From Schmidtea nova (Eukaryota): a DNA stretch of 64,000 nt. Below the pieces are notes generated by a model. The model was not told the DNA's origin. It worked only from the letters and a program-made list of their open reading frames with translations, and ran no database searches. The stretch lies in NCBI GenBank assembly GCA_044892505.1, contig CM097884.1, positions 68,696,001 through 68,760,000 on the forward strand, given 5' to 3'. Position numbers and translations under genes: made by a program. Shown here piece by piece: positions 20,506 through 62,580 of this stretch. The first letter of the stretch is position 1, and the number at the start of each line of letters is the position of its first letter.

Positions 20506-20508
<3 letters not shown>

Positions 20509-20589
<81 letters not shown>
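20509..20589. repeat. (TA)n microsatellite; others at 24335-24416 and 25434-25506
   Basis: Uninterrupted TA runs of ~70-80 nt. Confidence 0.98.
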
Positions 20590-20593
<4 letters not shown>

Positions 20594-38300: not shown

Positions 38301-40350
38301 TTCACAATACGGCAGTTATGATCGCGAGCAATTCAAATCGATACATTTTGGTAGGGATAATTTAATTTGCCCGGAAATAATGAATAAGAAAGAAACAAGA
38401 AATGAATTTATTCATGAATATAAACAAATACAGTAAGAATTTATTTTATTGGGATATTATTTCAGTTTTATTTATCAAATTAATTTTTCTTTTAAGATCA
38501 TTGACATTTTTGCAAGCCGATCTTTTATTTATTGATAAAGCACTCAACTATCCGGGATACGGAGAAGAACGATATCATGCAAAAGTAGGGAAAATTTTCA
38601 AATTTTTTCTCTAATTTTCAATTTTATTTTTAGTCACTGAAATCGCAAGATATTTTCATTGGAATATCTCCGAAAGGAATAACAGTCTATCACCCGAATC
38701 CAGAAGCGTTTTCATGGAAAAGTTACATCAATTGCTATGAAATGCTGGGAAATCTCACAATTTTATATTCGGACAAGATCGGAAAGAAACAATCCACAAT
38801 GTTGCGAACATATGATAATGGATTTCTAATAGAACTGTTCAAACGGAACGAATATGCATATCGGTAATCAAATATTGATTTTATTAATATTCCATTGATT
38901 GTTCCCATTTTATTAGAATGCTTCACAAGAAAACCTACAATATAAATATCACTCCAACTAAACAAATGATAAATGTAAGTAAAATCTTAATTTTTCACTA
39001 TTGATATATTCAATTTTTTATCGAATACTTTTCTTTTTGTGAGACTACCTTAATTCGTGCTAAATATGAAACACAATATTAACTGGTAGCCTGAGAGAAT
39101 TGGGAGCAATATTGAAACATACAAAAAAATTAAGAATATGAAAACTTTTTAATTGGATATTTTAATGATTTTTTTGTTTTTTATTTAGGAATCTGAATAT
39201 TCATCGGAAAAACCACCAATTCCAAAAAGACATAATTTTGTTTTAAGTGCAGAAAAAGAGAATGAAATTTTCACCAATGAAATGCAATCTCCGATTGCTT
39301 CAGAAACTTCATCCAATGAGTGCGATGAGAGAAATCAGTTGAGCGATCAAAACACAGATGACTCATGGTATCACAGTGATAACAGCGTATCTAGTAAGAA
39401 ATCAACGAAAGCACTTGTTTGTGATCAATATGTTATGAAAGGAAATCGCACTTCCGAACCCAGCGCCAGTTCACAATATTCATCAGATGAATCGATTAAA
39501 ACCTTAGAGGAAAACGAAGTTCAGAATTCAGCCAATCACAAAGAAAGTTGTTCCGAAAATCGATGCCTCCTCAGTTTCATGGATAATATCAAATCGGGAA
39601 ATTCTAGTGTCACGGGAAATATTGATTTACTTTCAGAACTAAATGGCGGCGAAGATCTGGAATTAATTAAAAAAGGACAATGGACAAATCTTTTCGATGA
39701 AGTTTACCGATACATGGATTATTATGAGCTGCAACATGACGGCGATTGCAACAATGAAACATTGAAACAGAATTCATTGCAAATTACCGAAGAAACGCCG
39801 AAAGAAATAAATGATTCGGAAAAGAAATACAATTCAACATCGAAATTGGAAGATCAAACTTTTCATGAATCTTTCAATCCGAATAAATTGTCAACAAAAA
39901 CTAAAAAGAAAAAAGGATTTTTGTGGAAATTGATCAAAAGTTTGAATAACTATTTCCGATAATTGGGAAAATTAATCATTTACATTCATGGAGGATTTTT
40001 ATATTTCTGATTGAATAATTGATAAATGTTTGCTGTGGTATTTATTTGGCTTTCATTCAAGTCAAATTTATAAAATATCCCGATTAATAATGTTGTGCTA
40101 ATATAGTTTCGGTAGGACTAAATTTTATTCTGACTCCTTGTGTTCTTTGAAAATCAATGAAATCCAACAAAAAAAATGTTTATTTATTAAGAACACATTT
40201 CCACAACGTTAATACACTTCGATTTTTGCTTTGGCTAAACTATCCGAAGGACGTCACCCATGAAATCTGATAGAGATGATATTCATTTTTAATCACTGAC
40301 GATTCTCCTTAATTTTCTAAAATTCTTAAATTTCTTACTCAAAATATTTT
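35311..40350 (+). repeat. 5.0-kb segment duplicated directly at 52013-57106
   Basis: Both copies start ATTTTCTAGCGGGATAG and end CTTACTCAAAATATTTT. Near identical apart from a 12-bp minisatellite expansion at ~53560-53630. Confidence 0.95.
37568..39962 (+). CDS. FERM (band 4.1) domain gene, copy B; 9 exons, 599 aa
   Basis: Exons 37568-37759, 37811-37918, 37971-38010, 38070-38196, 38250-38432, 38497-38584, 38634-38863, 38917-38974 and 39189-39962 join via GT-AG introns into an 1800-nt open frame. FERM motifs: ICQDLNIVEKNFFGLQY, RWLKP, FQYYP, YYLIEQLKNDI, YGSYD, QADLLFIDKA..YG, DIFIGISPKGITVY..FSW. Acidic/Ser-rich tail. Confidence 0.92.
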
Positions 40351-41424
40351 TGTTGAGGTTCCAAGAATCTCAACTTGATGAACTTATATAAATAAATAAG
40401 TCAAAGACTGGTTCTTTTCTAAACTTTATTTAAATTATAACAATTTACAATTTTGATAAAAATTAAACAATTACCTCACAAAATATATGTATCAATTTCA
40501 ACATATATTTTATATATGTATAGATGCGTGTGTGTGTGTGAATATTTGCAGCTTCCTGAGCTCGGATGTGTAAATAGGTATGCTCAAATTATGTTGTAAT
40601 ATCAATTTATTGAATTTACAACTCTTCTTTAAAGCTTTTGATTTTTGGGTGATTTAACTGAAAAATCAGTCAGTTTATATACTAAATTTTAAGGCACTTA
40701 ATCTGTCAATAATGATTGTTATTTTGCCTCTTGAGTTGATTGAAATTGTTTTTGAAAATAGAGTTGTTTTCAAAACAGAATTGTTTTCAAAATTATTTTT
40801 TAACCTTGAGATATTATTTCATTTTTCTGACCTTGTAGGTCAGAAATATAATTTATTTAAACAAACAGTAATTTATTTATTTTTAATTTATTTAAACAAT
40901 CTGTATTATTTATTTATTTATTTTATTATTATTATTATTTATTGAATTAAAATATTAAAATATAAATGAAAATATAATCCATTTTCCAAATAGTTAAAAA
41001 ATTAATTTACATAAAATATTTTCAACACAAAATATTTTTTCAAAATTATATAAAATTTTGTCCATCACCATAAAAATGTCAATAAATGTTCGCAATATCA
41101 CAAATGATAAATTGTCAAATTTTAAATTGTCATGATGATAAATTGTCATTATAAAAATTAATTTTCAACAATATTTTATTAACAGAAACAAAATAAAATT
41201 ATCCCATAAAAATAAAAATTGCCAGATAGTCATCACATAAAATATTATCATATAAAATCACTAAAATCATAATGTCATTGAATTTGATATTTTCCATTGT
41301 CTATCTATTTTAAAAAAATACATCAACAAATAAAATCAATTATTCATATCATCAATTATCAAAACCAATAAAATAAAAGAAAATGTTATCACAATCAAAT
41401 GTAGTTCATCAAGTCAAATTATTA

Positions 41425-43179
41425 TCATTGTTGGCCTGGGTTCTGATTGTTGTTATCCACATACACATTTAGTCTGTACTTATTTGCCCCTATTGTATAA
41501 TTTTCATCTATCTCAAAATTTTCGACTATCTTCCCTGTATCTAACACTACTCCCTGGGGCGTCAAGGTTATGTCCTCATAACCTTTTTCAACATAATATA
41601 TGTGTATTTCATTCCCATCTACAATCACTGTTGTTTTCTTTACATTGCTATTATATGTGACAGTGATTTCTGGCATGGGTTCTTCTATTGTGATTTGAGG
41701 TTCTGGTCCTAATTCATCTTCTTCCATTGGCTCAATTCCTTCTACTTCCAAATTAGAGTTATCTTCATCTATTGTTATGATTTCAAATGTTGGTTTCTTA
41801 TTTCCGTCCGATGTGGAACAATTTTCTTTAATTGTTTTCTTTGTTATTGTTTTCATTCCATTGTCAGCAGCTTTTTCCCATTCGGTTTCTGTGAGTAAAT
41901 ATAGTAAGCGAACTATTAAGCAAGTTTCACCAACATTAAAAGGTTCTGGTTTTAATAATATATTATTAAGTTTTTTGTTTCTCTTCAGATCATTTGTATT
42001 CTTAATAATCTGAAATGCTAAATTTGATAATTTAATCCTGTCTTCCGGGACATTATTGACGAATGTTTTCATATATTCGGTGTTCGAGAGTTCTCTTACT
42101 CCCATAATATCATCCAGGTCTATTGTGACACTTTTCAGTTTTTTCATAATGTCGAAACCTACTATTATTTTTCCATAGAGGTGTTTCTTGATTTCTAACA
42201 ATGCTATGAATTCGTCCATATTGCCTATACTATTTTCTCTGGTAGCCATTGTGATTTCTGGAAAGAATCTTTGTATTTTTTCTCTTGGGGTAATTTTACT
42301 TTGAAATAGTGTGTCTCCTTTGTAGTTTCTAATACAGACATCTACTGGTCTGTACTCTTTATTAAAATCTTGTACCGCTTTTATGTCTACAAAAGTTATT
42401 TTTCCTTGTCTTTCTTCGGGTGTTAGTGTTTGCTTCGTGAAAGGTATTTTCTTTTCTACGAATATGTTATCCATTCTAATGTCTGACCAAATGGGTTCTA
42501 ATTTTTTAAAGGGATTTTCTATTGTGGGTACATATAATATTTCAATTGCAATTACACATGGCATATTGTGTAATTGTATAATGATATTGTTGAATTCTGT
42601 AGACAATTTACGTTCTCTAAGGGTTTTAAATATTATTGATGTATTGTTTGCAGTCGCTAATACTTTATCGTTGTGTTTTAGTGATATTGTTGTTTTGGTA
42701 GTATGAATTACTATTCTATGGGGAATTTTGATGCCTTCTCTTGCATCTCTATCTGCATTTTGACTTTCTTCAAAACTACCTATAATTTCTTTTAATTTAA
42801 ATCTTCTTGATGAGTTGAATTTTACGATGATCATTTCTCTTTCTTCTATATCTACTTTTAATGCATTTGGTATGCATACCTGATTCGGGAATTTCCTTAG
42901 TGTAATTTCTTCATCATCTGTGTGAATGCTATTTTGAATGATCTTATAAAATGCTGTGTGGTGTTTATATGTGGTGCATGTGGATGTGCATGTGGATATT
43001 GTTGAGCTTGACTGATTGTTTGAGGCTGATTGGTTCATTGGTTGGATTGTTGGTTGATCTATTCTAAAAATAAAATATGACATTATATATTTTATATTAA
43101 TGCAGCTGTAGGACCTACCCTTAGATGCAATATAATATATTGTCAGATATGGGTAAATTTTATAAATTATTGGACACAT
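41425..43179 (-). CDS. Element ORF2 (584 aa): beta-rich N-domain, inactive DEDDh exonuclease-like domain (~41900-42405), acidic linker
   Basis: FVDIKAV..PVDVCIRNYKGDTLFQSKITP..EIT..LYGKIIVGFDI..VRELS..KLSNLA..FNVGET follows the REX4/ISG20 pattern, but the catalytic E, D, H and D appear replaced. Confidence 0.75.
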   Translation of the reverse strand: MCPIIYKIYPYLTIYYIASKGRSYSCINIKYIMSYFIFRIDQPTIQPMNQSASNNQSSSTISTCTSTCTTYKHHTAFYKIIQNSIHTDDEEITLRKFPNQVCIPNALKVDIEEREMIIVKFNSSRRFKLKEIIGSFEESQNADRDAREGIKIPHRIVIHTTKTTISLKHNDKVLATANNTSIIFKTLRERKLSTEFNNIIIQLHNMPCVIAIEILYVPTIENPFKKLEPIWSDIRMDNIFVEKKIPFTKQTLTPEERQGKITFVDIKAVQDFNKEYRPVDVCIRNYKGDTLFQSKITPREKIQRFFPEITMATRENSIGNMDEFIALLEIKKHLYGKIIVGFDIMKKLKSVTIDLDDIMGVRELSNTEYMKTFVNNVPEDRIKLSNLAFQIIKNTNDLKRNKKLNNILLKPEPFNVGETCLIVRLLYLLTETEWEKAADNGMKTITKKTIKENCSTSDGNKKPTFEIITIDEDNSNLEVEGIEPMEEDELGPEPQITIEEPMPEITVTYNSNVKKTTVIVDGNEIHIYYVEKGYEDITLTPQGVVLDTGKIVENFEIDENYTIGANKYRLNVYVDNNNQNPGQQ

Positions 43180-43273
43180 ATATAGATGATTTTGATATAA
43201 TTTTATTGGGTAAAATGATTTCTGAAATATGATTGGATGGGCTATTTTACAATTTATGATTGGGTTTTTTATT

Positions 43274-46200
43274 TTAACAAAGGGTAGATAGTGTGTACCT
43301 TCCAGGTATATATCTAATGAGAGAACTCCGATAACGCTGCCTCTTCCACTTATATTTTCTATAAGTTTGCGTTCCTATCCACATTGTTATAGTTATTAAT
43401 AATATTATGCTAAAAATTATTACATACATTGGCCATGTTTTATATAAAAGTTTTGGTTGGGGGTGATACAGATTTTGAAATTCTTCCCAGTTATTTATTG
43501 TTATTGCAGGTTTATTTAATGGTATTCTATTTAATATTCTAGGTTTTTCCGTTTGGGATCTTCTCTGCTTTTTCCTTTTGTATATTTTCTGAGATTTTGT
43601 TTTTATTATTTCACATTGGGTCTTTTTCAAATGCCACATTGGTGTTTCTGTACAGAAATAATAATTAGTGTCGGGTTTCAAATTTGTGTATCTGTCGATA
43701 TATTTCTTTTCGTTATTTTTCGTCTTTTGTATAACTTTTGAATTATTAATAAATTTTAAGTATGATTGAATCATTGGGTTCCTATTTAGATTAATAATTG
43801 TGATTTTATCATGTTCTCTTATTATTTTTATATCCTTGTTATTAATTATATTTGCATTAGCTGTATTAAATATAATGAGGGTGATTATTGATATCATTAA
43901 TATACTTTGTGGTTGTGATCTTAAGTTGTATTTATGTGGTTTTATTATTGGTAGTTCGTCTTCTGCAAGTTTGCATCTATTGACGTGCACAACAGTTGGA
44001 TCCTCGTTCTTATTTTTTTGGATATGTAAATTTTCGTTGATCACTTTTATGACTTCGTATGGGCCTTTAAATGGTCGTGCTAGTTTAGTTGTCTTACCCT
44101 TGCCTACTTGTGGTGACATTAATCTAATTTTGTCGCCTATTTTAAAATTATGAGGTTTAGCCGTTTTATCGTATTCATCCTTGTATTGTTCTTGACGAAA
44201 TTTAACTTTTAGATTAGTTATTTTATATACTTCTTGTAATCTTTCTTGCATTAGCGTAACATAATCTGGGGTGTCTAAATATTGTGATATTTTTGGTTCA
44301 AAGACCGTGTCAATTGGCATTATTGGTTCCCTTAAGTACATCAAATAGTATGGTGAATATCCAGTTGTTTCATTTGGTGTGATGTTATGGATATAAGTAC
44401 ATTGGTTTATATATTCATCCCAGTCGTTTTGATTTTTATTTACAAAAACTGATAGTCTATTCAATAATGTACCATTAAATCTTTCTACTAATCCATCTGT
44501 TTGAGGGTGGTATGCTGTTGTATTTATTTTTTGTATATTAAAAATATTAGCTATTCTAGAAATTGTTTCGCTCATAAAATTTCTTCCTTTATCGGTGAGT
44601 AATTTTCTTGGTGTGCCTAACTTAAATATAATTTTTTCCGTTAATAGCTTAGCTACTGTTTCCGCTGTTTCATCTTTTGTTGGAAAAGCTTCTGCCCACT
44701 TTGTGAAATAATCACTAAAAACCAATATGTGTTTATTACCGTTTATTGTAGTGGGTAATTTGCATAAAAAGTCCATGGCACATAGTTCCATAGGAGCTGT
44801 TGTTACAGGTATTGGACGAAGTGGTGCTCTTGTTTTAGTACCTGTATTTCTTCTAGTAGCACATATAGTACATGCTTTACACCACGCTTTAACATCATTT
44901 TTTAAATTTTCCCAGTAGTATTTTTGTAATAGTCTATTTGCTGTTTTTCTGGCTGATAAGTGACCTCCTAGTGTTCCATCATGATATTGTAATAAAAGTA
45001 TTTTTCTTAATTTTTGAGGGACTATAATGAGTTTATTCCCTGTCGTGCTTTCTATTATCAATAAATTTTTATTGATTTTATATTTATGGTTTTTTCCTTT
45101 TTTAATTTCATCTCTTATTTTTGATAAATCAGGATCGTTCATTTGTTCTTCATATATATGTATAGGGTTTTCTGCAACTATTGCGAATACTTCTAGAGCA
45201 CTTAATTCTGGTATACGAGATAATGCATCTGCATTCTTATTTATTCTGCCAGGTTTATAGATAATTTTAATTTGCATATCTTGAATCTTCATTGCCCATT
45301 TTAATAATCTACTTGAAGTATCTTTATGCTTCCATAACCCTTCTAATGGTTTGTGATCGGTTCTTATTATTACTTCTGATCCGTATATATATTGCTTGAA
45401 CTGTTTTAACGCAAACATAATAGCATAACATTCTTTCTCTATCGTCGAATATCTGATTTCAGCATTCTTTAACGTTTTGCTTGCATATGCGATGACGTAG
45501 TCTTTTCCTTTTTCCTCTTCTTGGCCTAAGACTGCTCCTACGGCTTTCCCGCTGGCATCTGTCATAATGATAAATTGTTTAGTAAAATCAGGGTATCTAA
45601 GTATTGGTGCAGTCACTAATTTTTCTTTCAGTTGTTCAAAGGAACTTTGTTGTCTTTGAGTCCACAATTTTTGTGGTTTTTCGTTAATTTTGTTTAATTT
45701 TTGGACTATCAGTGTTTTTCTTCCATCTTCCTTTGTTTTTACTCCTTTTGTTAATTCAATTAATGGAGCTGCTATTTTAGCATAATTTTCGATAAATTTT
45801 CGATAATACCCTGTTAAACCTAAAAATCCTTGTACTTCCTTAACTGATTTTGGTATTGGAAATCGTTGTACTGTTTTTATTTTGTCTGGGTTTGGGATTA
45901 TGCCTTCTACTGAGACAATATGTCCTAAATATAAGGCTGAAGGTTCTGCCCATTTACATTTTGTAGGTTTAATTTTAATTTTTGATTTTCTAAATCTTTC
46001 TAATACATTTTTTATATCTTCTAGATGTTCCTCGAATGTTTTTGATGCTATCAGTACATCATCCATATATACTGCGCAATGTTGTACATCTATCAATATC
46101 GTATTCATTAGCCTTTGAAATGTTGCTGGTGCATTTACCATTCCGAATGGTAGTCTTAAGAATTCGTATAGCTCATTTTCTATCACAAATGCTGATTTTT

Positions 46201-49200
46201 CAATATCTCCTTCTTCTATTTGGATTTGCATATATCCTTTATTAGCATCTATGACCGTAAAATATTTAGCGCCTCTTAGTTTATCGTATTGTTCTTGTGC
46301 CTTTGGAAATGGATATGAGTCTTTTGTTGTTACTTCGTTTAATTTTCTATAATCGATACACATTCTAATTTCGCCATCTTTCTTTCTAACTGGTACTATT
46401 GGTGAAGCCCACTGTGAGAAACTTTGTCTAATTACTCCTGCCCCTTTTAGTTCATTTATTTGTCTCTTTATTTCTTCTCGAAGTTTATATGGTGTTACAT
46501 AGGGTCGTTGTTTTATTGGTCTAGCGTTCCCTGTATCAATTACATGTTTAATGATATCCGTGTCTCCTAGATCAAATTCGTGCTTTGCAAAAACATCATT
46601 ATATTTATCAATTAATATCTGCAATAATTTTTGTTGAACCTTGTCCAGATAATCGTTATTTATTGTAGTCTTTTCGTAAAATTTAATGTCATTCGGTTTA
46701 ATTGTATCTTCAAGGTTGTTACTTTCTATACTTATCTCGCCAATATCGTATTTATATTTTGATAATTGACCTAATTTTGTACCTTTATGAATTTTTATTT
46801 TTCTGTTTTCGAAATTGGCAATTCGAATTGGGATTATACCCTTTTTGGGTATTACACATTCGTCCGTTAGCATTATATTTCTATTTTCTGTAATCGTTGT
46901 GTTGGGTTCGAAAATAAATATGTCATCACTTTGAATATTAACTTTTATAGGTATAATATTATCACTTTCATATTCTAGTTCAAATTCTTCTATCGCGCTT
47001 ACTTCTATCGGCTTTTTATAACTTTTGTTTATCTTTCTTTTTATTTTGTTATCTGACAAATCTATTACATGATTCTTTAATTTTTTCAGAATATCTATGC
47101 CTAGAATACATTTCCTTTGACATATATCTGCTACTCGGAACACATGATCTATGGTCTGATTTTCAAAGTATACTGTAAGTTTTACGTTTCCTTTAATAGG
47201 TATAGTGTGTGAAGAAAGTGACAATAATTCATCATTTGTTGATGTGATATTTTGAAGTTGTTTTTCTGTTAGTAGATCTTCTTCTATCAATGATGCAGCG
47301 GCACCGGTATCTACTAGCGCATTTAGTATTTGATTGTTTATCGTTATTTGGGTTCTTGGCCTCATGTCGTTCGCTTCTTCTCTTTCTTCTAGTCCATAAC
47401 ATCCGTATACTTTCTTTGGTTTTCTTATCAGCGTGTGGGTGTTATAATCTTTTAGAGGTATATTAGTTTCGATCTCATTGCCTAGATTTCTTAATTGATC
47501 CATGTGTATAATATATGGTCCTCCTTGCGTTGGTTCCGTGTGATCGAATTCTTCCGTATGATTATTTTCTTGATTGGTATTGTCATCTATTAGTCTTTCT
47601 TCTGTTGTCTTTCTTATTATTCTTTTGATATCTTTATCATGTTTTGCAGTTATTAAATATTTTGCAATAAATGGACATAAACAAGCTAGCATTTTGTATG
47701 AATTGCCAAATACTTGTCTCAGCTGTCTTAATGATACTAGTGATGAACATATCATTTTTAGTAGTGCAATAGAATAATAGATGCCGAGTATGGTTGAGAA
47801 GGTATTTCCTAGGATTGCAAAGTATCCCCATATACTATATAGAACTCGATAAACTACCTTCTTGAAGTGTTCTTTTGATAACAAGATGTCGAAATTGTAT
47901 TGTCCATCGTGGCTATTCTCGATAACTTTGCTTGCTATTATTGTTAGTACTTTCTCCTTTTCGTTCGGAAATAATAAATGTTTTCTTGCACTTTCTATGT
48001 CTTCCTTTGTATAAAGTCCATTGTTATCAAAATCATTTACTTCTATGAATTCTAGTTTCTTATCTAGTTCTGTCATTTCTAGATTTAGTGGTCTTATTGC
48101 TACCTTCTTATCTGACATCGTTATCCATGTTTCGTCATCTAATTTATATAGAGGGTCTAATAAGTTTGTACATTTATCTATTCTCTTAGGTATGTAGTTT
48201 TTATCTGTTAGTATCCTTGTTATGGGTTGTAAGTAGACTTTCTCTCCCTTATAAATAACTGGTAATTCGTTTGTACATTGTTTGTTCGTAGCTAATGATA
48301 CACTGACTGGTTTACATTGAAATGTTTGGATTACTTCGCCGACAACTCTAGCAAATGCGCCTCTTTCTGAAAAGAGCATTGGGGCCATTAGATCCGGATT
48401 TGTAATTGCTAATGCCATTTTCGTTCTTAAAATTTCTCGGTTAAGCTTACAATCATTTATTATTGTTTCTTGATATACCCTATCTAATTGCATTAATTGA
48501 TGGTGATAAAAATAGTCGATCTTATTATTGAAATATGATGAAAGTTTAATATCGTATTTGTTTACTTTTATTTTCGCATCTTTTATTTCATCTTTACTCA
48601 AATATAGACCTTTATAATTGGTTTGTATTATTGACTTTCCACATTTTATAATTTCCCCTTTACTAACAAATCTCAATGCTTCTCCTGAAGATTCTGTCAT
48701 ATATATTGTGGGTGTATCTTTTTCTTGGATTACAATTGTCTTTCGTTTTCTATCTCTTACTTTAGTTGATTCTGTATTTGTAAACTGTTTGCCTTTAATT
48801 GCTGTAAATTTTAGCGACTTCAATATTGTTAGAGGACAATCGTATGGATCAACTTTATATATTACTATTGATTCACCAGTGTCACAACTTACTTCTTTTG
48901 ATGTACAGAAAGGGTGTGTCATCATTTTTTGTGTTATGCTGTCAAATGATGCTTTAAACTGTCTAAGTTCGACAATGTATTCTCGTCTTACAACGGCGTT
49001 TTTTATAATGTGTCCCCATATTCTATATTCCCCACCTTGACAATATCCTCCCTGTGAAGACCATCCAATTACATCTACTCGTTGTTTTACTCGTGCACCT
49101 ACCTGTGCTTTTAGTTCGATTTCATGTATTTTTATCTTCTTTGATTGAAATGCATTTTCACACTCTTGTGGTGTTATTATAACTGTGTCTGGTGTAAATG

Positions 49201-52012
49201 ACGGTCGGAGTATCGTCCTTGCTATATTATTACATACAAAGACTTCTTCAGAATATTTTATTACACATTCTTTTGCTTCTGTATGTATAAAATCAGATTC
49301 TTGATAAACATAAAATATTTTAGGTTCTGTGGTACTTAAAGTGGTTGGATTAGCTTCTGGGCAATTTTCTACATCTAATAGTGAATATTTTTGTCCCCAT
49401 TTTGGATTCTGACAATCATAAGCGATCATACCTGTACTACTCTTTATTAAGTTAAGTAATATTGTTATCATCATTATTATAATAGGTATTGATAATCCAT
49501 GATTACTTTTTCCTGATTTCATCAATGTTTTATTTATTATTTTCTTTAATCGTCTTTCAACTTTTTTTTCTTGGGTATCTATTTCTATGGTAGGTGTCTC
49601 TATCGGCACTGTTTTATCGTATAAGATTTGCCACCCACCTTTAGACTGTATCCATGGTATCACTTCGGGTTTAAATTTTATTAATATTTGTTCGGCTACT
49701 CGATGTACTTGTTTCTCCGCATTTTTTATCAATACATATTCTGATCTATAAATGAGGTATGCCAATGCTGTTACTACTCTATCCCGATTGATTCCTGTTC
49801 TGAATAATATTTTCAAGACAACTTTTTCATTAACATCTTCAGTCACTAAGTTTTTTATATCTGTTGTAATTAGTTTAATTCGATTCCCTATGTTATCTGC
49901 TAAAGATGATATGTTTGCGTTGGAATATAATCTTGGGTATACAGTTTTAATCAAATCTATAATTATATCTGTATCTTCACTATTTGTTGACATTTCGCTT
50001 GCAATCTCTCTCAATTTTTCCGCCATCCGTTTACTGGTAAACTTATTTGTTATTTCTGACTCTTGTGACTCATCTCCATCTTGTTTTATCGTTTCAAAAT
50101 CCTCTGCTTCATATGTTACATCGTTTTTCTGACTCGCATCTGATATAGATATTCTTCTATCATTAGCAATCCATTCATCTAGCATTGATTCTAATCCCAC
50201 TTTAACTGATACGGTTATTATATTGTTATCAATTGAATTTATCCCATAGTCCATTAAAAAATCTTCACTTTGCATCTTTATTCCGTAAAAGTATAATACT
50301 ATTTCATCATTGATTCCTATTTCGCTGTACCAATTTGCTCTGGCTATTTGTTTTATCTTTTTCACTTTTGTACAAGTATGTACCCCTTGTTTATGAATGA
50401 TGATTTTAGGTGTATCTCCATTTTTTGTTTCTAATGTAATTTCCAAGGGTTCATGTAACTTCTCATTTTTTCGAACAAATTCACTATAACATCTCAACAT
50501 CTCTTTTATCTCAATTTCTAATTCAAACAACTTTGTTTCCTTTTGTCTTTGAGCCAATAGCGGTATCAAGTTTCTCAGATTCTCAAGATTTATCCCCTCT
50601 ACATGAATTTTATTTAATATTCTCAATACTTCATTATCATCTATAGGGTACTTTTTTAAAGATTCGTCCAATTCTTGCTTTAAAATATTATGTCTATCTA
50701 TCTCTGCTAGTAATTCTTCATCTCTTTCTCTTTGTTCTCTTAATTCATCATTATCCATCTTAACTTCATTAGTAAAAGTTTTAAACTCATTAATCAATAC
50801 ATTAATTTTATTCCTTTCAATTAGTCTCTCATATTTTGTCTTAAATTCTTGTAATTCATCCCTCAGCATCTCGATTTCATTATTGGGTTCTTTAACCTCC
50901 ATACCATTTATTTGTTTCACCTCTGGCTCCTTTTTAAACTGCACTCTGTTTGGTGATTCAACTCGTATATTTCTACATGCTTTTGCCATATGACCATACT
51001 TTTGACAATTAAAACATTTTATTTCACCTCGAAAATTAATTTTGTCTCTTCCATCATTATTAAATGGGCTAGGTCTTCTATCTCGATTATACATTTGTTG
51101 ATTTGGACTTGGTCGTCTACCTCTAAGATTATCTCTATTTGACCCAAAATTATATCTATTATCATCATATCTATTTCGATCAGAACTGTTCCTTGTATTA
51201 AAGTTATCCCTATAGTTCCGATTATCATTAAAACGACTATTTTTATTATATCGATTATTATCAAAATAATTATCCCTATTATAGTTTAAACGTCTCTCAT
51301 TATCTTTATTATATTCAAAGTAATTATTTTTATCATTTCTGGTAAATTCTACATAATTGTCATTTCGACTATTCGGTCTACCCCTTGGGCTATTTGACCT
51401 CTTATTATTTTCTGGTGATTGATTTCGACTTGCATTTGGACTCATCCTTTTTCTATTTTTAACAAAATTCAAATATAACTGCTTCATCTCTTCCCATGGA
51501 ATATTATCATCTTTATCAGTTACCTCAGATTTCCCTATTTTACTCTCTAATTCTACTGCATCAATTGTTGCGTTAGATCTATCTCTTTGAATTGCTTCAA
51601 TTCTTCGAGCTTTCTGAACTAGTTCGTTTAAATCTTCATATTCGACCATTATTAATGCCTTGTATAAATATTTTTGAATTCCACTCCAAAATTGATCCTC
51701 TATTAATTTCGCAGTATGTTCTCCTACTCCAAAAGCTTTTCGAGCTAACTCGGTCAAATTATACACATATTCTCCAATTGTTTCTCTGCTACCTTGGTAT
51801 CTATTTCTAAATTTTTGTACATTAATTTTCTGCAAATCTCGCTCAATTACAATTTCACCTCTTAAATTGTTGACTAAGTCTTCCCAATTTCTACCCTTAC
51901 ATTCTAAATTATTATATGCCTGCAATGCATAACCCTTTAAATATAATGGAATTCGTCTTTTTAACTCATCTTGTGTCCACCCACAAGCCTCTGCGTATTG
52001 TGCAATTTCATC
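43274..52012 (-). CDS. Single polyprotein Gag-Bcl2-like-Env-PR-RT-RH-IN-FN3-like/TM
   Basis: The frame stays open upstream of the listed TTG start (IAQYAEACGWTQDELKRRIPLYLKGYA). Zinc knuckle CFNCQKYGHMAKAC 50975-51016; protease LVDTGAAASLI ~47305; RT YMDD ~46060; RNase H TDAS ~45555; integrase HHCC + DDE core ~44450-44985; GPY ~44085. No stop or frameshift in 8.7 kb. Confidence 0.95.
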   Translation of the reverse strand, partial: DEIAQYAEACGWTQDELKRRIPLYLKGYALQAYNNLECKGRNWEDLVNNLRGEIVIERDLQKINVQKFRNRYQGSRETIGEYVYNLTELARKAFGVGEHTAKLIEDQFWSGIQKYLYKALIMVEYEDLNELVQKARRIEAIQRDRSNATIDAVELESKIGKSEVTDKDDNIPWEEMKQLYLNFVKNRKRMSPNASRNQSPENNKRSNSPRGRPNSRNDNYVEFTRNDKNNYFEYNKDNERRLNYNRDNYFDNNRYNKNSRFNDNRNYRDNFNTRNSSDRNRYDDNRYNFGSNRDNLRGRRPSPNQQMYNRDRRPSPFNNDGRDKINFRGEIKCFNCQKYGHMAKACRNIRVESPNRVQFKKEPEVKQINGMEVKEPNNEIEMLRDELQEFKTKYERLIERNKINVLINEFKTFTNEVKMDNDELREQRERDEELLAEIDRHNILKQELDESLKKYPIDDNEVLRILNKIHVEGINLENLRNLIPLLAQRQKETKLFELEIEIKEMLRCYSEFVRKNEKLHEPLEITLETKNGDTPKIIIHKQGVHTCTKVKKIKQIARANWYSEIGINDEIVLYFYGIKMQSEDFLMDYGINSIDNNIITVSVKVGLESMLDEWIANDRRISISDASQKNDVTYEAEDFETIKQDGDESQESEITNKFTSKRMAEKLREIASEMSTNSEDTDIIIDLIKTVYPRLYSNANISSLADNIGNRIKLITTDIKNLVTEDVNEKVVLKILFRTGINRDRVVTALAYLIYRSEYVLIKNAEKQVHRVAEQILIKFKPEVIPWIQSKGGWQILYDKTVPIETPTIEIDTQEKKVERRLKKIINKTLMKSGKSNHGLSIPIIIMMITILLNLIKSSTGMIAYDCQNPKWGQKYSLLDVENCPEANPTTLSTTEPKIFYVYQESDFIHTEAKECVIKYSEEVFVCNNIARTILRPSFTPDTVIITPQECENAFQSKKIKIHEIELKAQVGARVKQRVDVIGWSSQGGYCQGGEYRIWGHIIKNAVVRREYIVELRQFKASFDSITQKMMTHPFCTSKEVSCDTGESIVIYKVDPYDCPLTILKSLKFTAIKGKQFTNTESTKVRDRKRKTIVIQEKDTPTIYMTESSGEALRFVSKGEIIKCGKSIIQTNYKGLYLSKDEIKDAKIKVNKYDIKLSSYFNNKIDYFYHHQLMQLDRVYQETIINDCKLNREILRTKMALAITNPDLMAPMLFSERGAFARVVGEVIQTFQCKPVSVSLATNKQCTNELPVIYKGEKVYLQPITRILTDKNYIPKRIDKCTNLLDPLYKLDDETWITMSDKKVAIRPLNLEMTELDKKLEFIEVNDFDNNGLYTKEDIESARKHLLFPNEKEKVLTIIASKVIENSHDGQYNFDILLSKEHFKKVVYRVLYSIWGYFAILGNTFSTILGIYYSIALLKMICSSLVSLRQLRQVFGNSYKMLACLCPFIAKYLITAKHDKDIKRIIRKTTEERLIDDNTNQENNHTEEFDHTEPTQGGPYIIHMDQLRNLGNEIETNIPLKDYNTHTLIRKPKKVYGCYGLEEREEANDMRPRTQITINNQILNALVDTGAAASLIEEDLLTEKQLQNITSTNDELLSLSSHTIPIKGNVKLTVYFENQTIDHVFRVADICQRKCILGIDILKKLKNHVIDLSDNKIKRKINKSYKKPIEVSAIEEFELEYESDNIIPIKVNIQSDDIFIFEPNTTITENRNIMLTDECVIPKKGIIPIRIANFENRKIKIHKGTKLGQLSKYKYDIGEISIESNNLEDTIKPNDIKFYEKTTINNDYLDKVQQKLLQILIDKYNDVFAKHEFDLGDTDIIKHVIDTGNARPIKQRPYVTPYKLREEIKRQINELKGAGVIRQSFSQWASPIVPVRKKDGEIRMCIDYRKLNEVTTKDSYPFPKAQEQYDKLRGAKYFTVIDANKGYMQIQIEEGDIEKSAFVIENELYEFLRLPFGMVNAPATFQRLMNTILIDVQHCAVYMDDVLIASKTFEEHLEDIKNVLERFRKSKIKIKPTKCKWAEPSALYLGHIVSVEGIIPNPDKIKTVQRFPIPKSVKEVQGFLGLTGYYRKFIENYAKIAAPLIELTKGVKTKEDGRKTLIVQKLNKINEKPQKLWTQRQQSSFEQLKEKLVTAPILRYPDFTKQFIIMTDASGKAVGAVLGQEEEKGKDYVIAYASKTLKNAEIRYSTIEKECYAIMFALKQFKQYIYGSEVIIRTDHKPLEGLWKHKDTSSRLLKWAMKIQDMQIKIIYKPGRINKNADALSRIPELSALEVFAIVAENPIHIYEEQMNDPDLSKIRDEIKKGKNHKYKINKNLLIIESTTGNKLIIVPQKLRKILLLQYHDGTLGGHLSARKTANRLLQKYYWENLKNDVKAWCKACTICATRRNTGTKTRAPLRPIPVTTAPMELCAMDFLCKLPTTINGNKHILVFSDYFTKWAEAFPTKDETAETVAKLLTEKIIFKLGTPRKLLTDKGRNFMSETISRIANIFNIQKINTTAYHPQTDGLVERFNGTLLNRLSVFVNKNQNDWDEYINQCTYIHNITPNETTGYSPYYLMYLREPIMPIDTVFEPKISQYLDTPDYVTLMQERLQEVYKITNLKVKFRQEQYKDEYDKTAKPHNFKIGDKIRLMSPQVGKGKTTKLARPFKGPYEVIKVINENLHIQKNKNEDPTVVHVNRCKLAEDELPIIKPHKYNLRSQPQSILMISIITLIIFNTANANIINNKDIKIIREHDKITIINLNRNPMIQSYLKFINNSKVIQKTKNNEKKYIDRYTNLKPDTNYYFCTETPMWHLKKTQCEIIKTKSQKIYKRKKQRRSQTEKPRILNRIPLNKPAITINNWEEFQNLYHPQPKLLYKTWPMYVIIFSIILLITITMWIGTQTYRKYKWKRQRYRSSLIRYIPGRYTLSTLC
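47650..49500 (-). other. Chuvirus-type (class III, gB-related) envelope glycoprotein domain
   Basis: Signal-like IPIIIMMITILLNLIKSSTG, then AYDC..YSLLDVENC, YDCPL, CG..I..TNY.GLYL, DCKLNR, GAFARVVGE..CKPV, CTNELPV.Y..YLQPITRIL, then a hydrophobic anchor VLYSIWGYFAILG..IYYSIALLKMIC. Confidence 0.8.
49615..50035 (-). other. Bcl-2 family domain within the polyprotein
   Basis: BH3-like MAEKLREIASEM, BH1-like LFRTGINRDRVVTALAY and BH2-like VIPWIQSKGGWQIL, in the correct order and with plausible spacing. Confidence 0.8.
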
Positions 52013-54322
52013 ATTTTCTAGCGGGATAGTTGTTATTCTCGGAATTAAAACTTTTATTATAAAAATTATGTCGAAAATATTATAAATGAAATAAATATAT
52101 TAATTTATTTTAAAAAATTGATTGTTAAAATTTGAAAATGTCTAACACTAAGAGTTTGATTATTTTTACTTTTATTTGTTCTTTCGTTTAATTATTCAAA
52201 GTCATTCTTAAAAAGATTCTAGGGCTGTAACCTATTTTAAAAGTAGTCTTGGATTATTGTGCTCCCAAGTTGTTGGTATGTAAAATATACCATTTCACTG
52301 GTATCAATATCGAGGAGTTGTTTGAAATGCACTACGATATGGTGCTTTGGGCTGGAGTCAAATGAGTCGAAAACTGCATTCTAGCACCAATGGATGTTCT
52401 TGCTGTCATGATTTTAAACGACAGCAATCGGTTCATCTTTGGTAGCTGAAATGAGAAAGTCACACTATTCTGATATTTACAATACCAAATACATTAATTT
52501 GCGGAAGAATATCAAGATGATGCCGAAGAAGATTTGATTTAAATCAAAATTTACTTTAAAATTTCGTGGTTTTTATTGATGTTTCTTTTTGTTAATATTT
52601 TTGTGAATTTTCATTGACGCTTGGTAATTTTGAGAGTCATTCGTGTTTATTTATTGTCTTGTTGTTTGTCAATCCTTTTTATGATTTTTTTGTGTATTGA
52701 TCTTTTTTATAGAATTTTTATAAGTTGGAATTTGTTTTTGCAGATCAGTTATTTATGTGATTTGTAAAATTTCTATTGTTTTGCAAAAACTTTAGAAAAA
52801 TTAATAAATTTCAAAGATTTTTAAAAAGGTTTTAAAATTGAAATAAATATATATAATTTTTATTTTATGTCACTGGTTATGCAATGAAAATATTATATAA
52901 TTGAGTACTTAATTATAAAATATTATATAATTCTGAAATATTGCGTTAATTTTGTAACCTCCTAGAAATATAGGGAGACTAATTGTAATTGATAGAGTTT
53001 ATGGATAAATGACTTGTACCAGAGTGTTCACTTCTCCCTACTGATCAAATCAATAATAAATTCTAGTGTTCTTTTTTTCAGTGTAGTCATCAAGCTAAAA
53101 CATGAGGAAATTTAGCAGGTGGCGTTTTTTTGCGGAATGATAAAATTGCCAAAATTTTAACAGTATACGTTGATCCAATATTCAAAAACCAAAATTAGAA
53201 CATATTGTTATGGTTTGCATGAACAGGCACGAAATAAAATAAAACTTACAAAAATATACGCAAAAAATATAAAAGCCTGTAAATTTAAAAAATAATATTA
53301 AAATACAAAAATTAATTAGAAATTTGAAAATTTTGAAAGTAAAGATTTAGCGGGGAAACTAGTATAGGAGGATGAGACGAATTAAAATACGGTAAGATGA
53401 AATTAAAAAGGGCCCCGAAAAAATAGGAAAAAACAAATTAATTAAAGGAATTAATTATTCAATGGAAAACCCGAGTGATGTGAGGAACCCTAGCCATCAG
53501 CAAATATATCTAATTATCAAGAAAATCAGATGAGTAGAGGGAGTTCGGGCGAACAATCACAAACCCAATCAAAAACCCAATCACAAACCCAATCACAAAC
53601 AATCACAAACCCAATCACAAACCCAATTACGAAATTGGAAATCCCGCAGTAAAAAAGGAAGTCACTATAAAAACCCAGACAAATGGCTCAAATCGCCAAT
53701 TGGTCGAAGCATGAAAATTTAATTCCAAAATTAGCTATAGTTTTCAAAGAGAAGTTTTAAAGTTAAAAAAGGTTAGAATTTGTGTCGAATCAATTTTTGC
53801 GTACCAGAAAAGAATCTCCAACATGAAGACCTACCCCTAACGCAAGAACAGTGTAGAAAATTCTGTTTTTGTAATTTTGAAGCCAAATTTGAAAATAAAA
53901 ATTTTTGTGTTGGGTTTTGGTTAATTCGTTTATACAGAAAGGACACAGGGAGTCAGACAGTAATCGACTATTAAATAATAACCCAACAATATTTACTAAT
54001 GTAAAGTTTTTGTTTCAAAAATTAAATTTTATTTATGTTAAACTTTATTTCTTAGACTTTTTATAGCCAAAATAGTGAGAAACTTATCCCAGGATGAATA
54101 ATGTAAAAATTAATTCAGTTTGTGAATAATATAACTTGGTAAATAGAAGCATATTAAAAATTATGAAAGCCTAAATGTTTATTTTTTGCGGAAATATTTT
54201 CTGTTTTTTAAAATGAGGAAATACAAATATTTTTATTTCAAATTTATTCATCTTATTGAGTAATAATTATCTAGAAATGATGAGAAAATATTTAAAAATT
54301 CATTTTTACAAATATAATACAA

Positions 54323-56718: not shown

Positions 56719-57319
56719 TTGGGAAAATTAATCATTTACATTCATGGAGGATTTTTATATTTCTGATTGAATAATTGATAAATGTTTGCTGTGGTATTTA
56801 TTTGGCTTTCATTCAAGTCAAACTTATAAAATATCCCGATTAATAATGTTGTGCTAATATAGTTTCGGTAGGAACACATTTTATTCTGACTCCTTGTGTT
56901 CTTTGAAAATCAATGAAATCCAACAAAAAAAATGTTTATTTATTAAGAACACATTTCCACAACGTTAATACACTTCGATTTTTGCTTTGGCTAAACTATC
57001 CGAAGGACGTTACCCATGAAATCTGATAGAGACGATATTCATTTTTAATCACTGACGATTCTCCTTAATTTTCTTAAATTCTTAAATTTCTTACTCAAAA
57101 TATTTTTAAATATTTCTCCTCAGACCAATTGGTAATTTTATTGAGATGAATTGGTTTATATACCACTCTCAATCCCATCAATCACTCTGGAGAAGCATGA
57201 AATCCAACTCTTCACACTAATTTTAAAATTTGAAATTTTCTTTGTTAGTGGCGCTCTGATAAATAGTTTTCCGGCTTGTCAGATCTGCCACTTTACCTCC
57301 TTTCCACAATGATTGGTGA

Positions 57320-58933: not shown

Positions 58934-58935
58934 TA

Positions 58936-61982: not shown

Positions 61983-62580
<598 letters not shown>

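What the first reader, a model, noticed from the sequence alone, without database searches (positions are those of the whole stretch)
40351..52012. Virus-like Gypsy element with Env placed between Gag and Pol in one giant polyprotein, plus host-modulating cargo
Enveloped LTR elements (errantiviruses, retroviruses, env-bearing BEL/Pao) normally carry env as a separate ORF 3' of pol. Here a complete glycoprotein sits in frame between Gag and protease, with no frameshift or stop in 8.7 kb. This would give 1:1 Gag:Env:Pol and need signal-peptidase processing, like an alpha/flavivirus polyprotein, with Pol returning to the cytosol after the anchor. With Bcl-2-like, FN3-like and pseudo-nuclease cargo, it looks like a possibly infectious invertebrate retrovirus-like system. 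The intact ORFs imply recent activity. This is the best candidate in the window for an undescribed system.
Basis: partly seen in the sequence, partly recalled or inferred. Interest (0 to 1): 0.95.

Follow-up and report, generated by a model that had tools for sequence, protein, structure and literature searches.

The report
Burro-like Gypsy element, Env inside polyprotein
This is a real retrovirus-like Ty3/gypsy element whose envelope fusion protein sits in frame between Gag and Pol, but that layout, including the Bcl-2-like piece just before Env, was published for planarian Burro elements in 2019, so it is a new member of a known kind.

Summary
On the minus strand, 43274-51925 is one stop-free frame of 2883 codons. 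It reads Gag (CCHC), a conserved spacer, a Bcl-2-like segment, a hydrophobic signal/anchor, Env, an anchor, PR-RT-RNase H-IN, and a short membrane-bracketed tail. A separate 584-aa ORF2 follows. Env matches Pfam Monjiviricetes_fusion (E 1e-87). Its model matches chuvirus-like glycoproteins (E 7e-38) and herpesvirus gB (E 6e-13), so it has the class III fusogen fold. Twelve public polyproteins (Env 35-40%, Pol 40-45% identical) share the one-protein order, so this is a family trait. It is not undescribed. Arkhipova and Yushenova 2019 (PMC6431247) describe planarian Burro elements with Gag...BCL2-like-Env-PR...IN in one ORF. GAG-ENV-POL elements are also catalogued in nematodes, bryozoans and flatworms (PMC13524379). 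This copy is compact and not fully intact. Gag has lost its start and N-terminus. The 5.0-kb flanking direct repeats (99.4-99.9% identical) lack TG..CA ends, a target-site duplication, a primer-binding site and a polypurine tract. The "FN3-like" and "pseudo-nuclease" cargo could not be reproduced. Two details may be new: the Bcl-2-like domain's anchor doubles as the Env signal, and a membrane module after IN keeps its position across the family.

The parts
52013..57107 (-). Upstream (5') copy of the 5.0-kb direct repeat. LTR-like in position and orientation; essentially non-coding on the element strand.
   Evidence: The window's self-BLAST gives 99.4-99.9% identity to 35311-40351. The ends are not TG..CA, there is no target-site duplication, and no primer-binding-site-like sequence lies next to it.
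50936..52012 (-). gag: capsid-like part plus one CCHC zinc knuckle. Broken gene with one 5' truncation (start codon and N-terminal residues absent).
   Evidence: Pfam zf-CCHC. PDB nucleocapsid hits. Colinear with the Gag of relatives, which all carry extra N-terminal residues starting with M. No in-frame ATG upstream.
50186..50686 (-). Conserved spacer domain of unknown family (aa ~414-580), downstream of the zinc knuckle.
   Evidence: phmmer matches to the same relative position in P0006, P0004, P0012, P0003, P0008 and P0001. No Pfam or PDB assignment.
49601..50044 (-). Bcl-2-like segment (aa ~628-775), all-helical, covering the BH1-BH2 region.
   Evidence: Pfam Bcl-2 E 8e-6, 26.8 bits, below the curated 31.4. 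PDB Bcl-xL E 0.014, aligned over BH1 and BH2. P0004 hits Pfam Bcl-2 at the same relative place. It aligns with P0004 and P0012. The single-sequence model was poor (pLDDT 40), and its top fold hits were mostly Bcl-2 family but not significant.
49433..49504 (-). Hydrophobic segment (aa 808-831). Inferred to be the internal signal/anchor for Env and, after cleavage, the C-terminal anchor of the Bcl-2-like part.
   Evidence: Kyte-Doolittle scan. A hydrophobic segment followed by small residues, and then a mature Env start ending in Y-D-C, is present in all 11 relatives aligned.
47792..49432 (-). Env ectodomain (aa 832-1378): class III fusion glycoprotein of chuvirus/mononegavirus-like, gB-type fold.
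   Evidence: Pfam PF24664 E 1.2e-87. AF2 model with pLDDT 73.9. Foldseek against PDB finds herpesvirus gB, E 6e-13. Foldseek against BFVD finds chu-like virus glycoproteins, E 7e-38. Ours and 12 of 13 relatives scored have 14 Cys.
47735..47791 (-). Env membrane anchor (aa 1379-1397), which returns the chain to the cytosol ahead of PR.
   Evidence: Hydropathy scan. A matching segment follows the Env ectodomain in 12 of 13 relatives scored.
47072..47365 (-). Aspartic protease (aa 1521-1618).
   Evidence: Pfam RVP E 8.6e-7. The D-T-G-A motif is seen in the translation.
45914..46390 (-). Reverse transcriptase (aa 1846-2004).
   Evidence: Pfam RVT_1 E 1.7e-34. The closest solved structure is the Ty3 RT 4ol8, E 5.9e-71. 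The Y-M-D-D motif is present.
45278..45664 (-). RNase H (aa 2088-2216).
   Evidence: Pfam RT_RNaseH and RT_RNaseH_2, E about 1e-36.
43970..45022 (-). Integrase: H2C2 zinc domain, DDE core and C-terminal domain (aa 2302-2652).
   Evidence: Pfam Integrase_H2C2 E 6e-19, rve E 6e-10, Integrase_p58_C weak. The D..D-x35-E spacing is read.
43274..43903 (-). C-terminal tail in frame with IN (aa 2675-2883, plus the stop codon): hydrophobic segment, ~131-aa middle part, transmembrane segment, basic end. Inferred small type-I membrane module.
   Evidence: Hydropathy scan. No Pfam or PDB match. A two-segment module lies in the same position in 8 of the 9 integrase-bearing relatives, although the sequences are not alignable.
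41425..43179 (-). ORF2, 584 aa, in a separate frame 3' of pol. Orphan accessory ORF.
   Evidence: No homologue in the protein search. No Pfam family. One weak PDB match to the ISG20 exonuclease, E 0.057.
40352..41424 (-). 3' non-coding stretch of the internal region, with short AT-rich tandem repeats.
   Evidence: No polypurine tract of 11 nt or more, and no similarity to the flanks.
35311..40351 (-). Downstream (3') copy of the 5.0-kb direct repeat.
31962..35109 (+). Third, partial and inverted copy of the repeat. It also carries 213 bp that otherwise lie just outside the upstream copy (57108-57320).
   Evidence: 99.5% identity to the reverse complement of 54172-57320. Weaker similarity continues about 60 bp past a TA run.

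Best explanation
This is a compact member of the known Burro-like / GAG-ENV-POL group of Ty3/gypsy (Metaviridae) endogenous retrovirus-like elements. It sits in an AT-rich invertebrate genome; a flatworm host is inferred from the literature but not shown. Shown: one reading frame encodes Gag (capsid-like part and CCHC knuckle), a conserved spacer domain, a Bcl-2-like segment, a hydrophobic segment, a chuvirus-like class III (gB-fold) fusion glycoprotein, a membrane anchor, PR-RT-RNase H-IN with their catalytic motifs present, and a short tail bracketed by two hydrophobic segments. An orphan ORF2 follows. Inferred mechanism: the polyprotein is translated as one chain. The hydrophobic segment before Env acts as an internal signal that takes the ectodomain into the ER lumen. 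Signal peptidase cuts just before the conserved start of mature Env (ending Y-D-C). That would leave Gag-spacer-Bcl-2-like tail-anchored on the cytosolic face, much as cellular Bcl-2 proteins are. The Env anchor returns the chain to the cytosol, where the element's protease would release Gag and the Pol enzymes. The last two hydrophobic segments would insert a second small membrane protein. The Bcl-2-like part would plausibly hold off death of the expressing cell. This particular copy is probably not autonomous. Its gag has lost the start and N-terminus, and its 5-kb flanking repeats lack canonical LTR hallmarks.
For: - ORF and domain order.
- Twelve independent public polyproteins of 2099-3865 aa are colinear with it in one protein (Env 35-40% identical, Pol 40-45%).
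- Env fold.
- Ty3-type RT.
- Conserved hydrophobic segment followed by a mature Env start ending Y-D-C, and an anchor after the ectodomain.
- Bcl-2-like segment.
- Post-IN two-segment module across the family.
- Published precedent for Gag...BCL2-like-Env-PR...IN in one Burro ORF1: PMC6431247.
- GAG-ENV-POL with gB-type Env in Nematoda, Bryozoa and Platyhelminthes: PMC13524379.
- BURRO1 is transcribed and piRNA-controlled in planarians: PMC8532177.
- Window composition of about 30% GC fits the >70% A/T reported for Schmidtea.
Against: - No Burro, NERV or published GAG-ENV-POL sequence was compared directly, so placement within that group rests on architecture and literature, not on a tree.
- The element is much smaller than Burro (2883 versus 4873-5140 aa). 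It lacks the MATH, BIR, ankyrin and dUTPase motifs.
- The Bcl-2-like call is below Pfam's curated cut-off, and its structure model failed (pLDDT 40).
- Topology and cleavage sites are inferred from hydropathy alone.
- The flanking repeats have no TG..CA ends, no target-site duplication, no primer-binding site and no polypurine tract. The element's true ends are therefore not established.
- The host is not identified.
Confidence: 0.85

Rival explanations
1. It is a previously undescribed kind of enveloped retroelement. On this view, gag-env-pol in one polyprotein with host-modulating cargo is new.
For: The nearest protein in a 5.8-billion-protein collection is only 35-48% identical in Env. ORF2 and the tail are orphans.
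Against: The same order, in frame, with BCL2-like directly before Env, is published for Burro (PMC6431247). GAG-ENV-POL elements are catalogued in three phyla (PMC13524379). Twelve colinear relatives already sit in public data.
Confidence: 0.03
2. The fusion is an artefact: an RNA-virus-derived glycoprotein insertion, or an assembly chimera, that happens to lie in frame inside an ordinary gypsy element.
For: The surrounding repeat structure is irregular: a third inverted repeat copy, shared flank and no canonical LTR ends.
Against: Twelve diverged relatives from independent samples have the same order in one protein. They share the same signal-like segment, the Y-D-C start of mature Env, and 14 ectodomain cysteines (11 of 12 polyproteins). 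There are no stops in 8.65 kb of 30% GC DNA.
Confidence: 0.02
3. The 5-kb direct repeats are not the element's LTRs. The window would then hold a rearranged fragment: a 5'-truncated internal region caught in a tandem or segmental duplication, or between copies of another repeat. The true LTRs would be elsewhere or lost.
For: The inner edge of the upstream repeat abuts gag coding sequence that has lost its N-terminus. There are no TG..CA ends, no target-site duplication, no primer-binding site and no polypurine tract. A third inverted copy shares 213 bp beyond the repeat's outer end, and older ~78% similarity continues in both outer flanks.
Against: Two long, same-orientation, 99.4-99.9% identical repeats that exactly bracket a gag-to-ORF2 core are what LTRs look like. 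Multi-kb LTRs are reported for Burro and Ogre. With one copy in hand the alternatives cannot be separated.
Confidence: 0.4
4. The locus is a host-domesticated gene set (co-opted Env or Gag) rather than a mobile element.
For: The very long open frame is preserved.
Against: The full PR-RT-RNase H-IN is retained with its catalytic motifs. The flanking repeats are near-identical. The neighbourhood is rich in transposable elements. No orthologue-like single-copy pattern is known.
Confidence: 0.02

Closest known systems
Burro / GYPSM1 giant gypsy-like LTR elements of planarians (Jurka 2007; Grohme et al. 2018; Arkhipova and Yushenova 2019, PMC6431247)
   Same: One ORF1 polyprotein holds Gag (retrotrans_gag plus CCHC). 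A BCL2-like motif lies directly before an Env that matches mononegavirus-type fusion glycoproteins, followed by PR-RT-RH-IN. There are accessory ORFs, multi-kb terminal repeats and an AT-rich host genome.
   Different: ORF1 here is 2883 aa against 4873-5140 aa. It has one CCHC knuckle rather than two or three, and no MATH_TRAF_C, BIR, ankyrin or dUTPase hits. The element is about 21.8 kb including repeats, against more than 30 kb.
GAG-ENV-POL 'errantiviruses' with HSV/gB-type ENV in Nematoda, Bryozoa and Platyhelminthes (PMC13524379), including the nematode elements of Sacco et al. 2022 (title only seen; paper not held)
   Same: They are Ty3/gypsy elements with a gB-type class III Env placed between gag and pol. 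The ectodomain is flanked by a signal peptide or transmembrane segment and a transmembrane anchor, and the cysteine pattern is conserved.
   Different: That survey does not mention Bcl-2-like or other cargo. Whether its elements are single-ORF is not stated in the text I could read. My recollection that Sacco et al. describe a continuous gag-env-pro-pol ORF is from memory only.
Chuvirus-like (Jingchuvirales) and other mononegavirus-type glycoproteins
   Same: They give the best fold matches to the Env model (E 7e-38 to 1e-34 over ~620 columns) and belong to the same Pfam family, PF24664.
   Different: Sequence identity is only 17-20%. Those proteins are stand-alone genes of negative-strand RNA viruses, not parts of a retroelement polyprotein. 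No viral sequence was fetched.
Mosquito BEL/Pao elements that captured a chuvirus glycoprotein (Dezordi et al. 2020, PMC7642597)
   Same: An LTR retroelement carries a PF24664-type glycoprotein. Hit P0013 is of this type, with BEL/Pao domains and Env at its C-terminal end.
   Different: That is a different superfamily (BEL/Pao), and Env lies after pol, not between gag and pol.
Insect errantiviruses (Drosophila gypsy, ZAM, 17.6)
   Same: They are env-bearing Ty3/gypsy elements.
   Different: There env is a separate ORF 3' of pol and is of the baculovirus F type (PMC13524379). Here Env is gB/chuvirus-type and inside the polyprotein.
Cellular and viral Bcl-2 family proteins (Bcl-xL as best PDB match)
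   Same: The alignment spans the BH1 and BH2 regions. The segment is all-helical and is followed by a short linker and a hydrophobic C-terminal segment.
   Different: It scores below Pfam's curated threshold. The glycine of the BH1 core seen in the Bcl-xL alignment is not kept. The fold is not confirmed. It is embedded in a polyprotein rather than free-standing.

Membership tests
Ty3/gypsy (Metaviridae) LTR retroelements | Pol order PR-RT-RNase H-IN with integrase after RT | tested here: met
   Pfam coordinates along one ORF.
Ty3/gypsy (Metaviridae) LTR retroelements | RT most similar to Ty3-type RTs | tested here: met
   The best solved relatives are the Ty3 RT 4ol8 (E 5.9e-71) and Ty3 Gag-Pol 7q5b. 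Retroviral RTs score far weaker.
Ty3/gypsy (Metaviridae) LTR retroelements | Gag with a capsid-like domain and CCHC knuckle | tested here: met
   zf-CCHC. The capsid-like part aligns with relatives, one of which weakly hits Ty3_capsid. The gene is 5'-truncated in this copy.
Ty3/gypsy (Metaviridae) LTR retroelements | LTRs with TG..CA ends and a 4-6 bp target-site duplication | tested here: not met
   The direct repeats are 5.0 kb and 99.4-99.9% identical, but the ends are not TG..CA and the flanks show no duplication.
Ty3/gypsy (Metaviridae) LTR retroelements | Primer-binding site after the 5' LTR and polypurine tract before the 3' LTR | tested here: not met
   The sequence next to the upstream repeat is gag coding sequence. 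No purine run of 11 nt or more lies ahead of the downstream repeat. The window has no tRNA gene to compare with.
Burro-like / GAG-ENV-POL env-carrying Ty3/gypsy elements | env located between gag and pro-pol, in frame | tested here: met
   The same holds in 12 relatives.
Burro-like / GAG-ENV-POL env-carrying Ty3/gypsy elements | Env of the mononegavirus-like / gB-type class III kind | tested here: met
   PF24664 E 1.2e-87. Fold matches to gB and to chu-like virus glycoproteins.
Burro-like / GAG-ENV-POL env-carrying Ty3/gypsy elements | BCL2-like motif immediately upstream of Env (Burro) | tested here: inconclusive
   It is present at the expected place with sub-threshold scores: Pfam E 8e-6 at 26.8 bits versus a 31.4 cut-off, and PDB E 0.014. 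An independent hit occurs in relative P0004.
Burro-like / GAG-ENV-POL env-carrying Ty3/gypsy elements | Giant size and MATH/BIR/ankyrin/SUMO-like/dUTPase modules (Burro proper) | tested here: not met
   ORF1 is 2883 aa and none of these Pfam families is detected. Relative P0004 does carry ankyrin repeats.
Burro-like / GAG-ENV-POL env-carrying Ty3/gypsy elements | RT/IN groups phylogenetically with published Burro or GAG-ENV-POL elements | not testable with these tools
No reference sequences of those elements were at hand.
Class III viral fusion proteins | Five-domain gB/G-type ectodomain fold between a signal and a C-terminal anchor | tested here: met
   Model pLDDT 73.9. Foldseek probability 1.0 to many gB structures over ~610-640 columns. 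Hydrophobic segments lie on both sides.
Class III viral fusion proteins | Trimer with fusion loops; membrane-fusion activity | not tested
   Only a monomer was modelled and no functional data exist.
Bcl-2 family | Helical-bundle fold with BH motifs | tested here: inconclusive
   The sequence alignment covers BH1-BH2. The single-sequence model has pLDDT 40. Most of its top fold hits are Bcl-2 family members, but at E 0.6-3.
Bcl-2 family | C-terminal hydrophobic membrane anchor | tested here: met
   The hydrophobic segment aa 808-831 lies about 40 residues after the BH2-like motif.
DEDDh exonucleases (ISG20-like), proposed for ORF2 | Significant match to the exonuclease domain with its acidic motifs | tested here: not met
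   There is only one PDB match at E 0.057 over 73 residues, no Pfam hit even for the excised segment, and no homologues.
Fibronectin type III, proposed for the C-terminal tail | Match to an FN3 profile or fold | tested here: not met
   No Pfam or PDB match at E up to 1-5.

The most novel reading that the evidence does not exclude
Two architectural details of this family appear in none of the three papers I could read and search. (1) The membrane anchor of the Bcl-2-like domain and the signal sequence of Env are one and the same hydrophobic segment. A single signal-peptidase cut would then create a tail-anchored Gag-linked Bcl-2-like protein on the cytosolic face and a mature class III fusogen in the lumen. 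(2) After integrase, nearly all family members end in a fast-evolving module bracketed by two hydrophobic segments (ectodomain 114-364 aa). This would be a second, position-conserved membrane protein inside the polyprotein, perhaps a partner or accessory of the fusogen. The near absence of N-glycosylation sequons in the Env ectodomain (0-3 in 533-547 residues in ours and 12 of 13 relatives) adds to the oddity.
Probability: 0.35. Interest if true: 0.5.

Novelty: new member of a known kind. Interest (0 to 1): 0.27.

Why it matters
The element confirms that the in-frame gag-env-pol layout is a stable family design with many diverged members in public data, and not only a curiosity of giant planarian Burro elements. 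A compact 2883-aa version shows which parts persist: Gag, a conserved spacer, Bcl-2-like in a subset, a chuvirus-type class III fusogen with 14 cysteines, Pol, and a terminal membrane module. That helps separate the core from optional cargo such as MATH, BIR, ankyrin or extra protease copies. The shared anchor/signal segment offers a concrete, testable picture of how one polyprotein can serve both cytosolic and lumenal products. None of this changes the main verdict: the architecture is already published.

Tried and rejected
1. **Aligning the short Bcl-2-like segment to full-length relatives with the alignment tool (A2, A3).** MAFFT spread the segment over thousands of columns. Both alignments were discarded. 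A local alignment of excised upstream regions was used instead.
2. **HMMER search of aa 590-790 against 1.84 billion representatives.** It returned one hit, P0018, a low-complexity protein with scattered zero-stretch Pfam matches. I judged it spurious.
3. **Single-sequence AF2 of aa 620-800.** pLDDT was 40, so the model is unusable as fold evidence.
4. **ORF2.** The protein search, Pfam and PDB gave nothing significant.
5. **Tail after IN.** No Pfam or PDB match and no similarity to relatives.
6. **Reading the 5-kb repeats as canonical LTRs.** The ends, target-site duplication, primer-binding site and polypurine tract all failed.
7. **Searching the window for the missing Gag N-terminus with the relatives' N-termini.** Only non-significant matches were found (E 0.07 or weaker). 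A CCHC-like match at 30585-30632 belongs to another remnant.
8. **Rfam scan.** No hits.
9. **Papers not held.** Sacco et al. 2022 and Grohme et al. 2018 could not be read.
    - Fetching contig DNA of the related polyproteins, and any exogenous virus sequence.
    - A splice model to supply a gag start. No tool predicts an intron there, and it would bridge a break.
    - The N run at 61590-61982 was left alone.
    - The scripts printed alignment rows with query-gap columns removed. This showed non-contiguous residues of three relatives side by side. Those rows were not saved or used.
Full report
**Observation.** The minus strand of the window carries one open frame of 2883 codons, listed as 43274-51925. 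The window is about 30% G+C, so roughly 8% of random codons are stops and a frame this long cannot stay open by chance. Pfam places the following along the single protein:
- a CCHC zinc knuckle (aa 302-318);
- a weak Bcl-2 match (aa 703-765);
- the viral fusion glycoprotein family Monjiviricetes_fusion (aa 815-1461, E 1.2e-87);
- retroviral protease (aa 1521-1618);
- reverse transcriptase (aa 1846-2004);
- RNase H (aa 2088-2216);
- the integrase zinc and core domains (aa 2302-2474).

A second ORF of 584 aa follows in another frame at 41425-43179. The finding's coordinates are exactly the stretch between two direct repeats, 35311-40351 and 52013-57107, which are 99.4-99.9% identical. The central observation, a glycoprotein in frame between Gag and protease, is therefore real.

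**Env.** I aligned the ectodomain (aa 831-1440) with 16 relatives and modelled it, giving mean pLDDT 73.9.
- Against solved structures, the model matches herpesvirus glycoprotein B over about 610-640 columns (E down to 5.7e-13, probability 1.0).
- Against predicted viral structures, the best matches are glycoproteins of chu-like and related negative-strand RNA viruses of arthropods (E 7e-38 to 1e-34). Nyami-, xinmo- and rhabdo-like viruses follow, and herpesvirus gB scores lower.

This is a class III fusogen of the chuvirus/mononegavirus type.

**The layout is a family trait.** I searched the whole polyprotein with words drawn from the Env part. The search returned 12 proteins of 2099-3865 aa from metagenome assemblies that carry PF24664 together with PR, and 9 of them also carry RT, RNase H and IN. 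Local BLAST shows them to be colinear with ours: Gag, spacer, Env, then PR and, where present, RT-RH-IN. Env is 35-40% identical and Pol 40-45%, and Pfam scans of three of them confirm the order. A thirteenth hit is a BEL/Pao element with Env at its C-terminus.

In all 11 relatives aligned upstream of Env, a hydrophobic segment and a few small residues precede a mature Env start ending Y-D-C. For the 13 relatives scored with ours (12 polyproteins and one Env-only hit), the ectodomain figures hold in ours and 12 of 13:
- the ectodomain is 533-547 aa long;
- it contains exactly 14 cysteines;
- it has only 0-3 N-glycosylation sequons;
- it is followed by a hydrophobic anchor.

For the thirteenth, P0012, the scan found no anchor, so its ectodomain could not be delimited. 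The RT is closest to the Ty3 RT among solved structures (E 5.9e-71).

**Cargo.**
- *Bcl-2-like segment.* It is reproducible but weak. Pfam gives E 8e-6 (26.8 bits, against a curated cut-off of 31.4) for aa 590-790 alone. A PDB search gives 56 distinct Bcl-xL/Bcl-2 sequences at E 0.014-0.4, aligned over the BH1 and BH2 regions. Relative P0004 independently hits Pfam Bcl-2 at the same relative position. Ours, P0004 and P0012 align there, whereas the other relatives have unrelated spacers. A single-sequence model failed (pLDDT 40). Most of its top fold hits are Bcl-2 family members, but none is significant.
- *Upstream spacer.* A domain at aa ~414-580 is shared with at least six relatives but has no family assignment.
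- *C-terminal tail.* The 'FN3-like' tail has no Pfam or PDB match.
- *ORF2.* It has no homologues, no Pfam family, and a single PDB match to the ISG20 exonuclease at E 0.057. The 'pseudo-nuclease' label is at best a lead.

**How it most likely works (inference from hydropathy and conservation).** The polyprotein has four hydrophobic segments: aa 808-835, 1379-1397, 2675-2694 and 2826-2854.
1. The first would act as an internal signal and the second as a stop-transfer anchor. Env would then be lumenal, and everything from PR to IN would be cytosolic again.
2. A signal-peptidase cut before the conserved Env start would leave the first segment as the C-terminal anchor of Gag-spacer-Bcl-2-like. 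This mimics the tail anchor of cellular Bcl-2 proteins.
3. The element's protease would then release Gag and the enzymes.
4. The last two segments bracket a ~131-aa stretch and a basic end, which looks like a small type-I membrane protein.

A module of this kind occupies the same position in 8 of the 9 integrase-bearing relatives (ectodomains 114-364 aa), although the sequences align only between close pairs.

**This copy is not intact.** All seven relatives compared start with M and carry 23-85 residues, partly conserved among them, ahead of the point where similarity to our Gag begins. Nothing matching them is found in the window, and no in-frame ATG precedes the capsid-like part. Gag therefore has one 5' truncation. 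The other domains show their catalytic motifs.

The 5-kb repeats are LTR-like in position and orientation. However, they have no TG..CA ends, no target-site duplication, no primer-binding-site-like sequence and no polypurine tract. A third, partial copy lies inverted at 31962-35109. It shares 213 bp with the sequence just outside the upstream repeat, and the outer flanks on both sides are about 78% similar to each other. With a single copy I cannot tell giant non-canonical LTRs from a rearranged or tandem arrangement. I give the rearrangement reading about 0.4.

**Comparison with what is known.**
- *Arkhipova and Yushenova 2019 (PMC6431247).* They describe the planarian Burro (GYPSM1) elements. 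One ORF1 of 4873-5140 aa holds Gag and CCHC knuckles, then MATH/BIR/ankyrin/SUMO-like motifs. A BCL2-like motif comes next, then an Env region with hits to mononegavirus fusion glycoproteins, and then PR, dUTPase, RT, RH and IN. [quoted passage not shown]
- *PMC13524379.* This survey catalogues GAG-ENV-POL Ty3/gypsy elements with gB-type Env in Nematoda, Bryozoa and Platyhelminthes. It cites Sacco et al. 2022 for nematode elements formed by capture of an RNA-virus glycoprotein. It does not mention Bcl-2.
- *PMC8532177.* BURRO1 is transcribed and piRNA-controlled in planarians.

Our element differs from Burro proper in being compact and lacking most of its cargo. I could not compare sequences directly.

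**Host.** The host is not identified. The composition fits the >70% A/T reported for Schmidtea, and the literature points to flatworms, but this is inference. The contig is not human-like.

**Left out and declared.**
- I did not try a splice model for a gag start.
- I left the N run at 61590-61982 alone.
- I recalled a few short motif strings from memory in my reasoning.
- Two scripts printed alignment rows with query-gap columns removed. This placed non-contiguous residues of relatives side by side. Those rows were not saved or used.

**Verdict.** This is a real and well-preserved member of a known kind, though this copy is probably not autonomous. The architecture is published. Two smaller points may be worth a specialist's look: the shared anchor/signal segment, and the position-conserved post-integrase membrane module.

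Noticed in passing
window 19622-24101, minus strand: Remnants of other, unrelated Ty3/gypsy pol genes (PR, RT, RNase H, IN fragments, 25-39% identical to our Pol). They are broken by at least four frame changes plus stops, and include a second short RT fragment. Short ~80-190-bp repeats and palindromic arrays lie around 18.2-25.6 kb.
   Followed up: partly
window 58930-59878, minus strand: A mariner/Mos1-like DNA transposase remnant (Pfam Transposase_1 E 2e-13, HTH_48), split over two overlapping ORFs.
   Followed up: partly
window ~62490-62571, minus strand: An ORF begins with a calmodulin-like N-terminus (EF-hand start). It then runs into ~114-122-bp tandem repeats and the N run at 61590-61982. 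This is probably the first exon of a host calmodulin-like gene. The N run was left untouched.
   Followed up: no
window 39282-39962 (+), 56038-56718 (+), 32563-33243 (-): Each copy of the 5-kb repeat holds the same 226-aa serine-rich ORF on the strand opposite to the element. It has no Pfam family.
   Followed up: partly
window 27043-29905 versus 57362-58719 (inverted): The outer flanks of the element and of the third repeat copy are ~77-79% similar to each other. The left side has a 2-kb extra stretch (29906-31961) that contains a CCHC-knuckle-like match at 30585-30632. The element may sit inside an older inverted repeat or another retroelement family.
   Followed up: partly
relatives P0001-P0012, P0015 (proteins): Family traits: Env ectodomains have exactly 14 cysteines and only 0-3 N-glycosylation sequons (ours has none). 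Several relatives carry two to five protease-like domains, located after Env, before RT and after IN. P0004 ends in ankyrin repeats.
   Followed up: partly
protein P0010: A 2627-aa Env-PR-RT-RH-IN polyprotein of this family is labelled at NCBI as a hypothetical protein of a Flavobacteriaceae metagenome-assembled genome. It is most likely a mis-binned eukaryotic contig.
   Followed up: no
window 35110-35310: The 200-bp spacer between the inverted third repeat copy and the downstream repeat starts with a TA run. It also contains a short stretch reminiscent of a tRNA T-arm, but ARAGORN calls no tRNA there.
   Followed up: no
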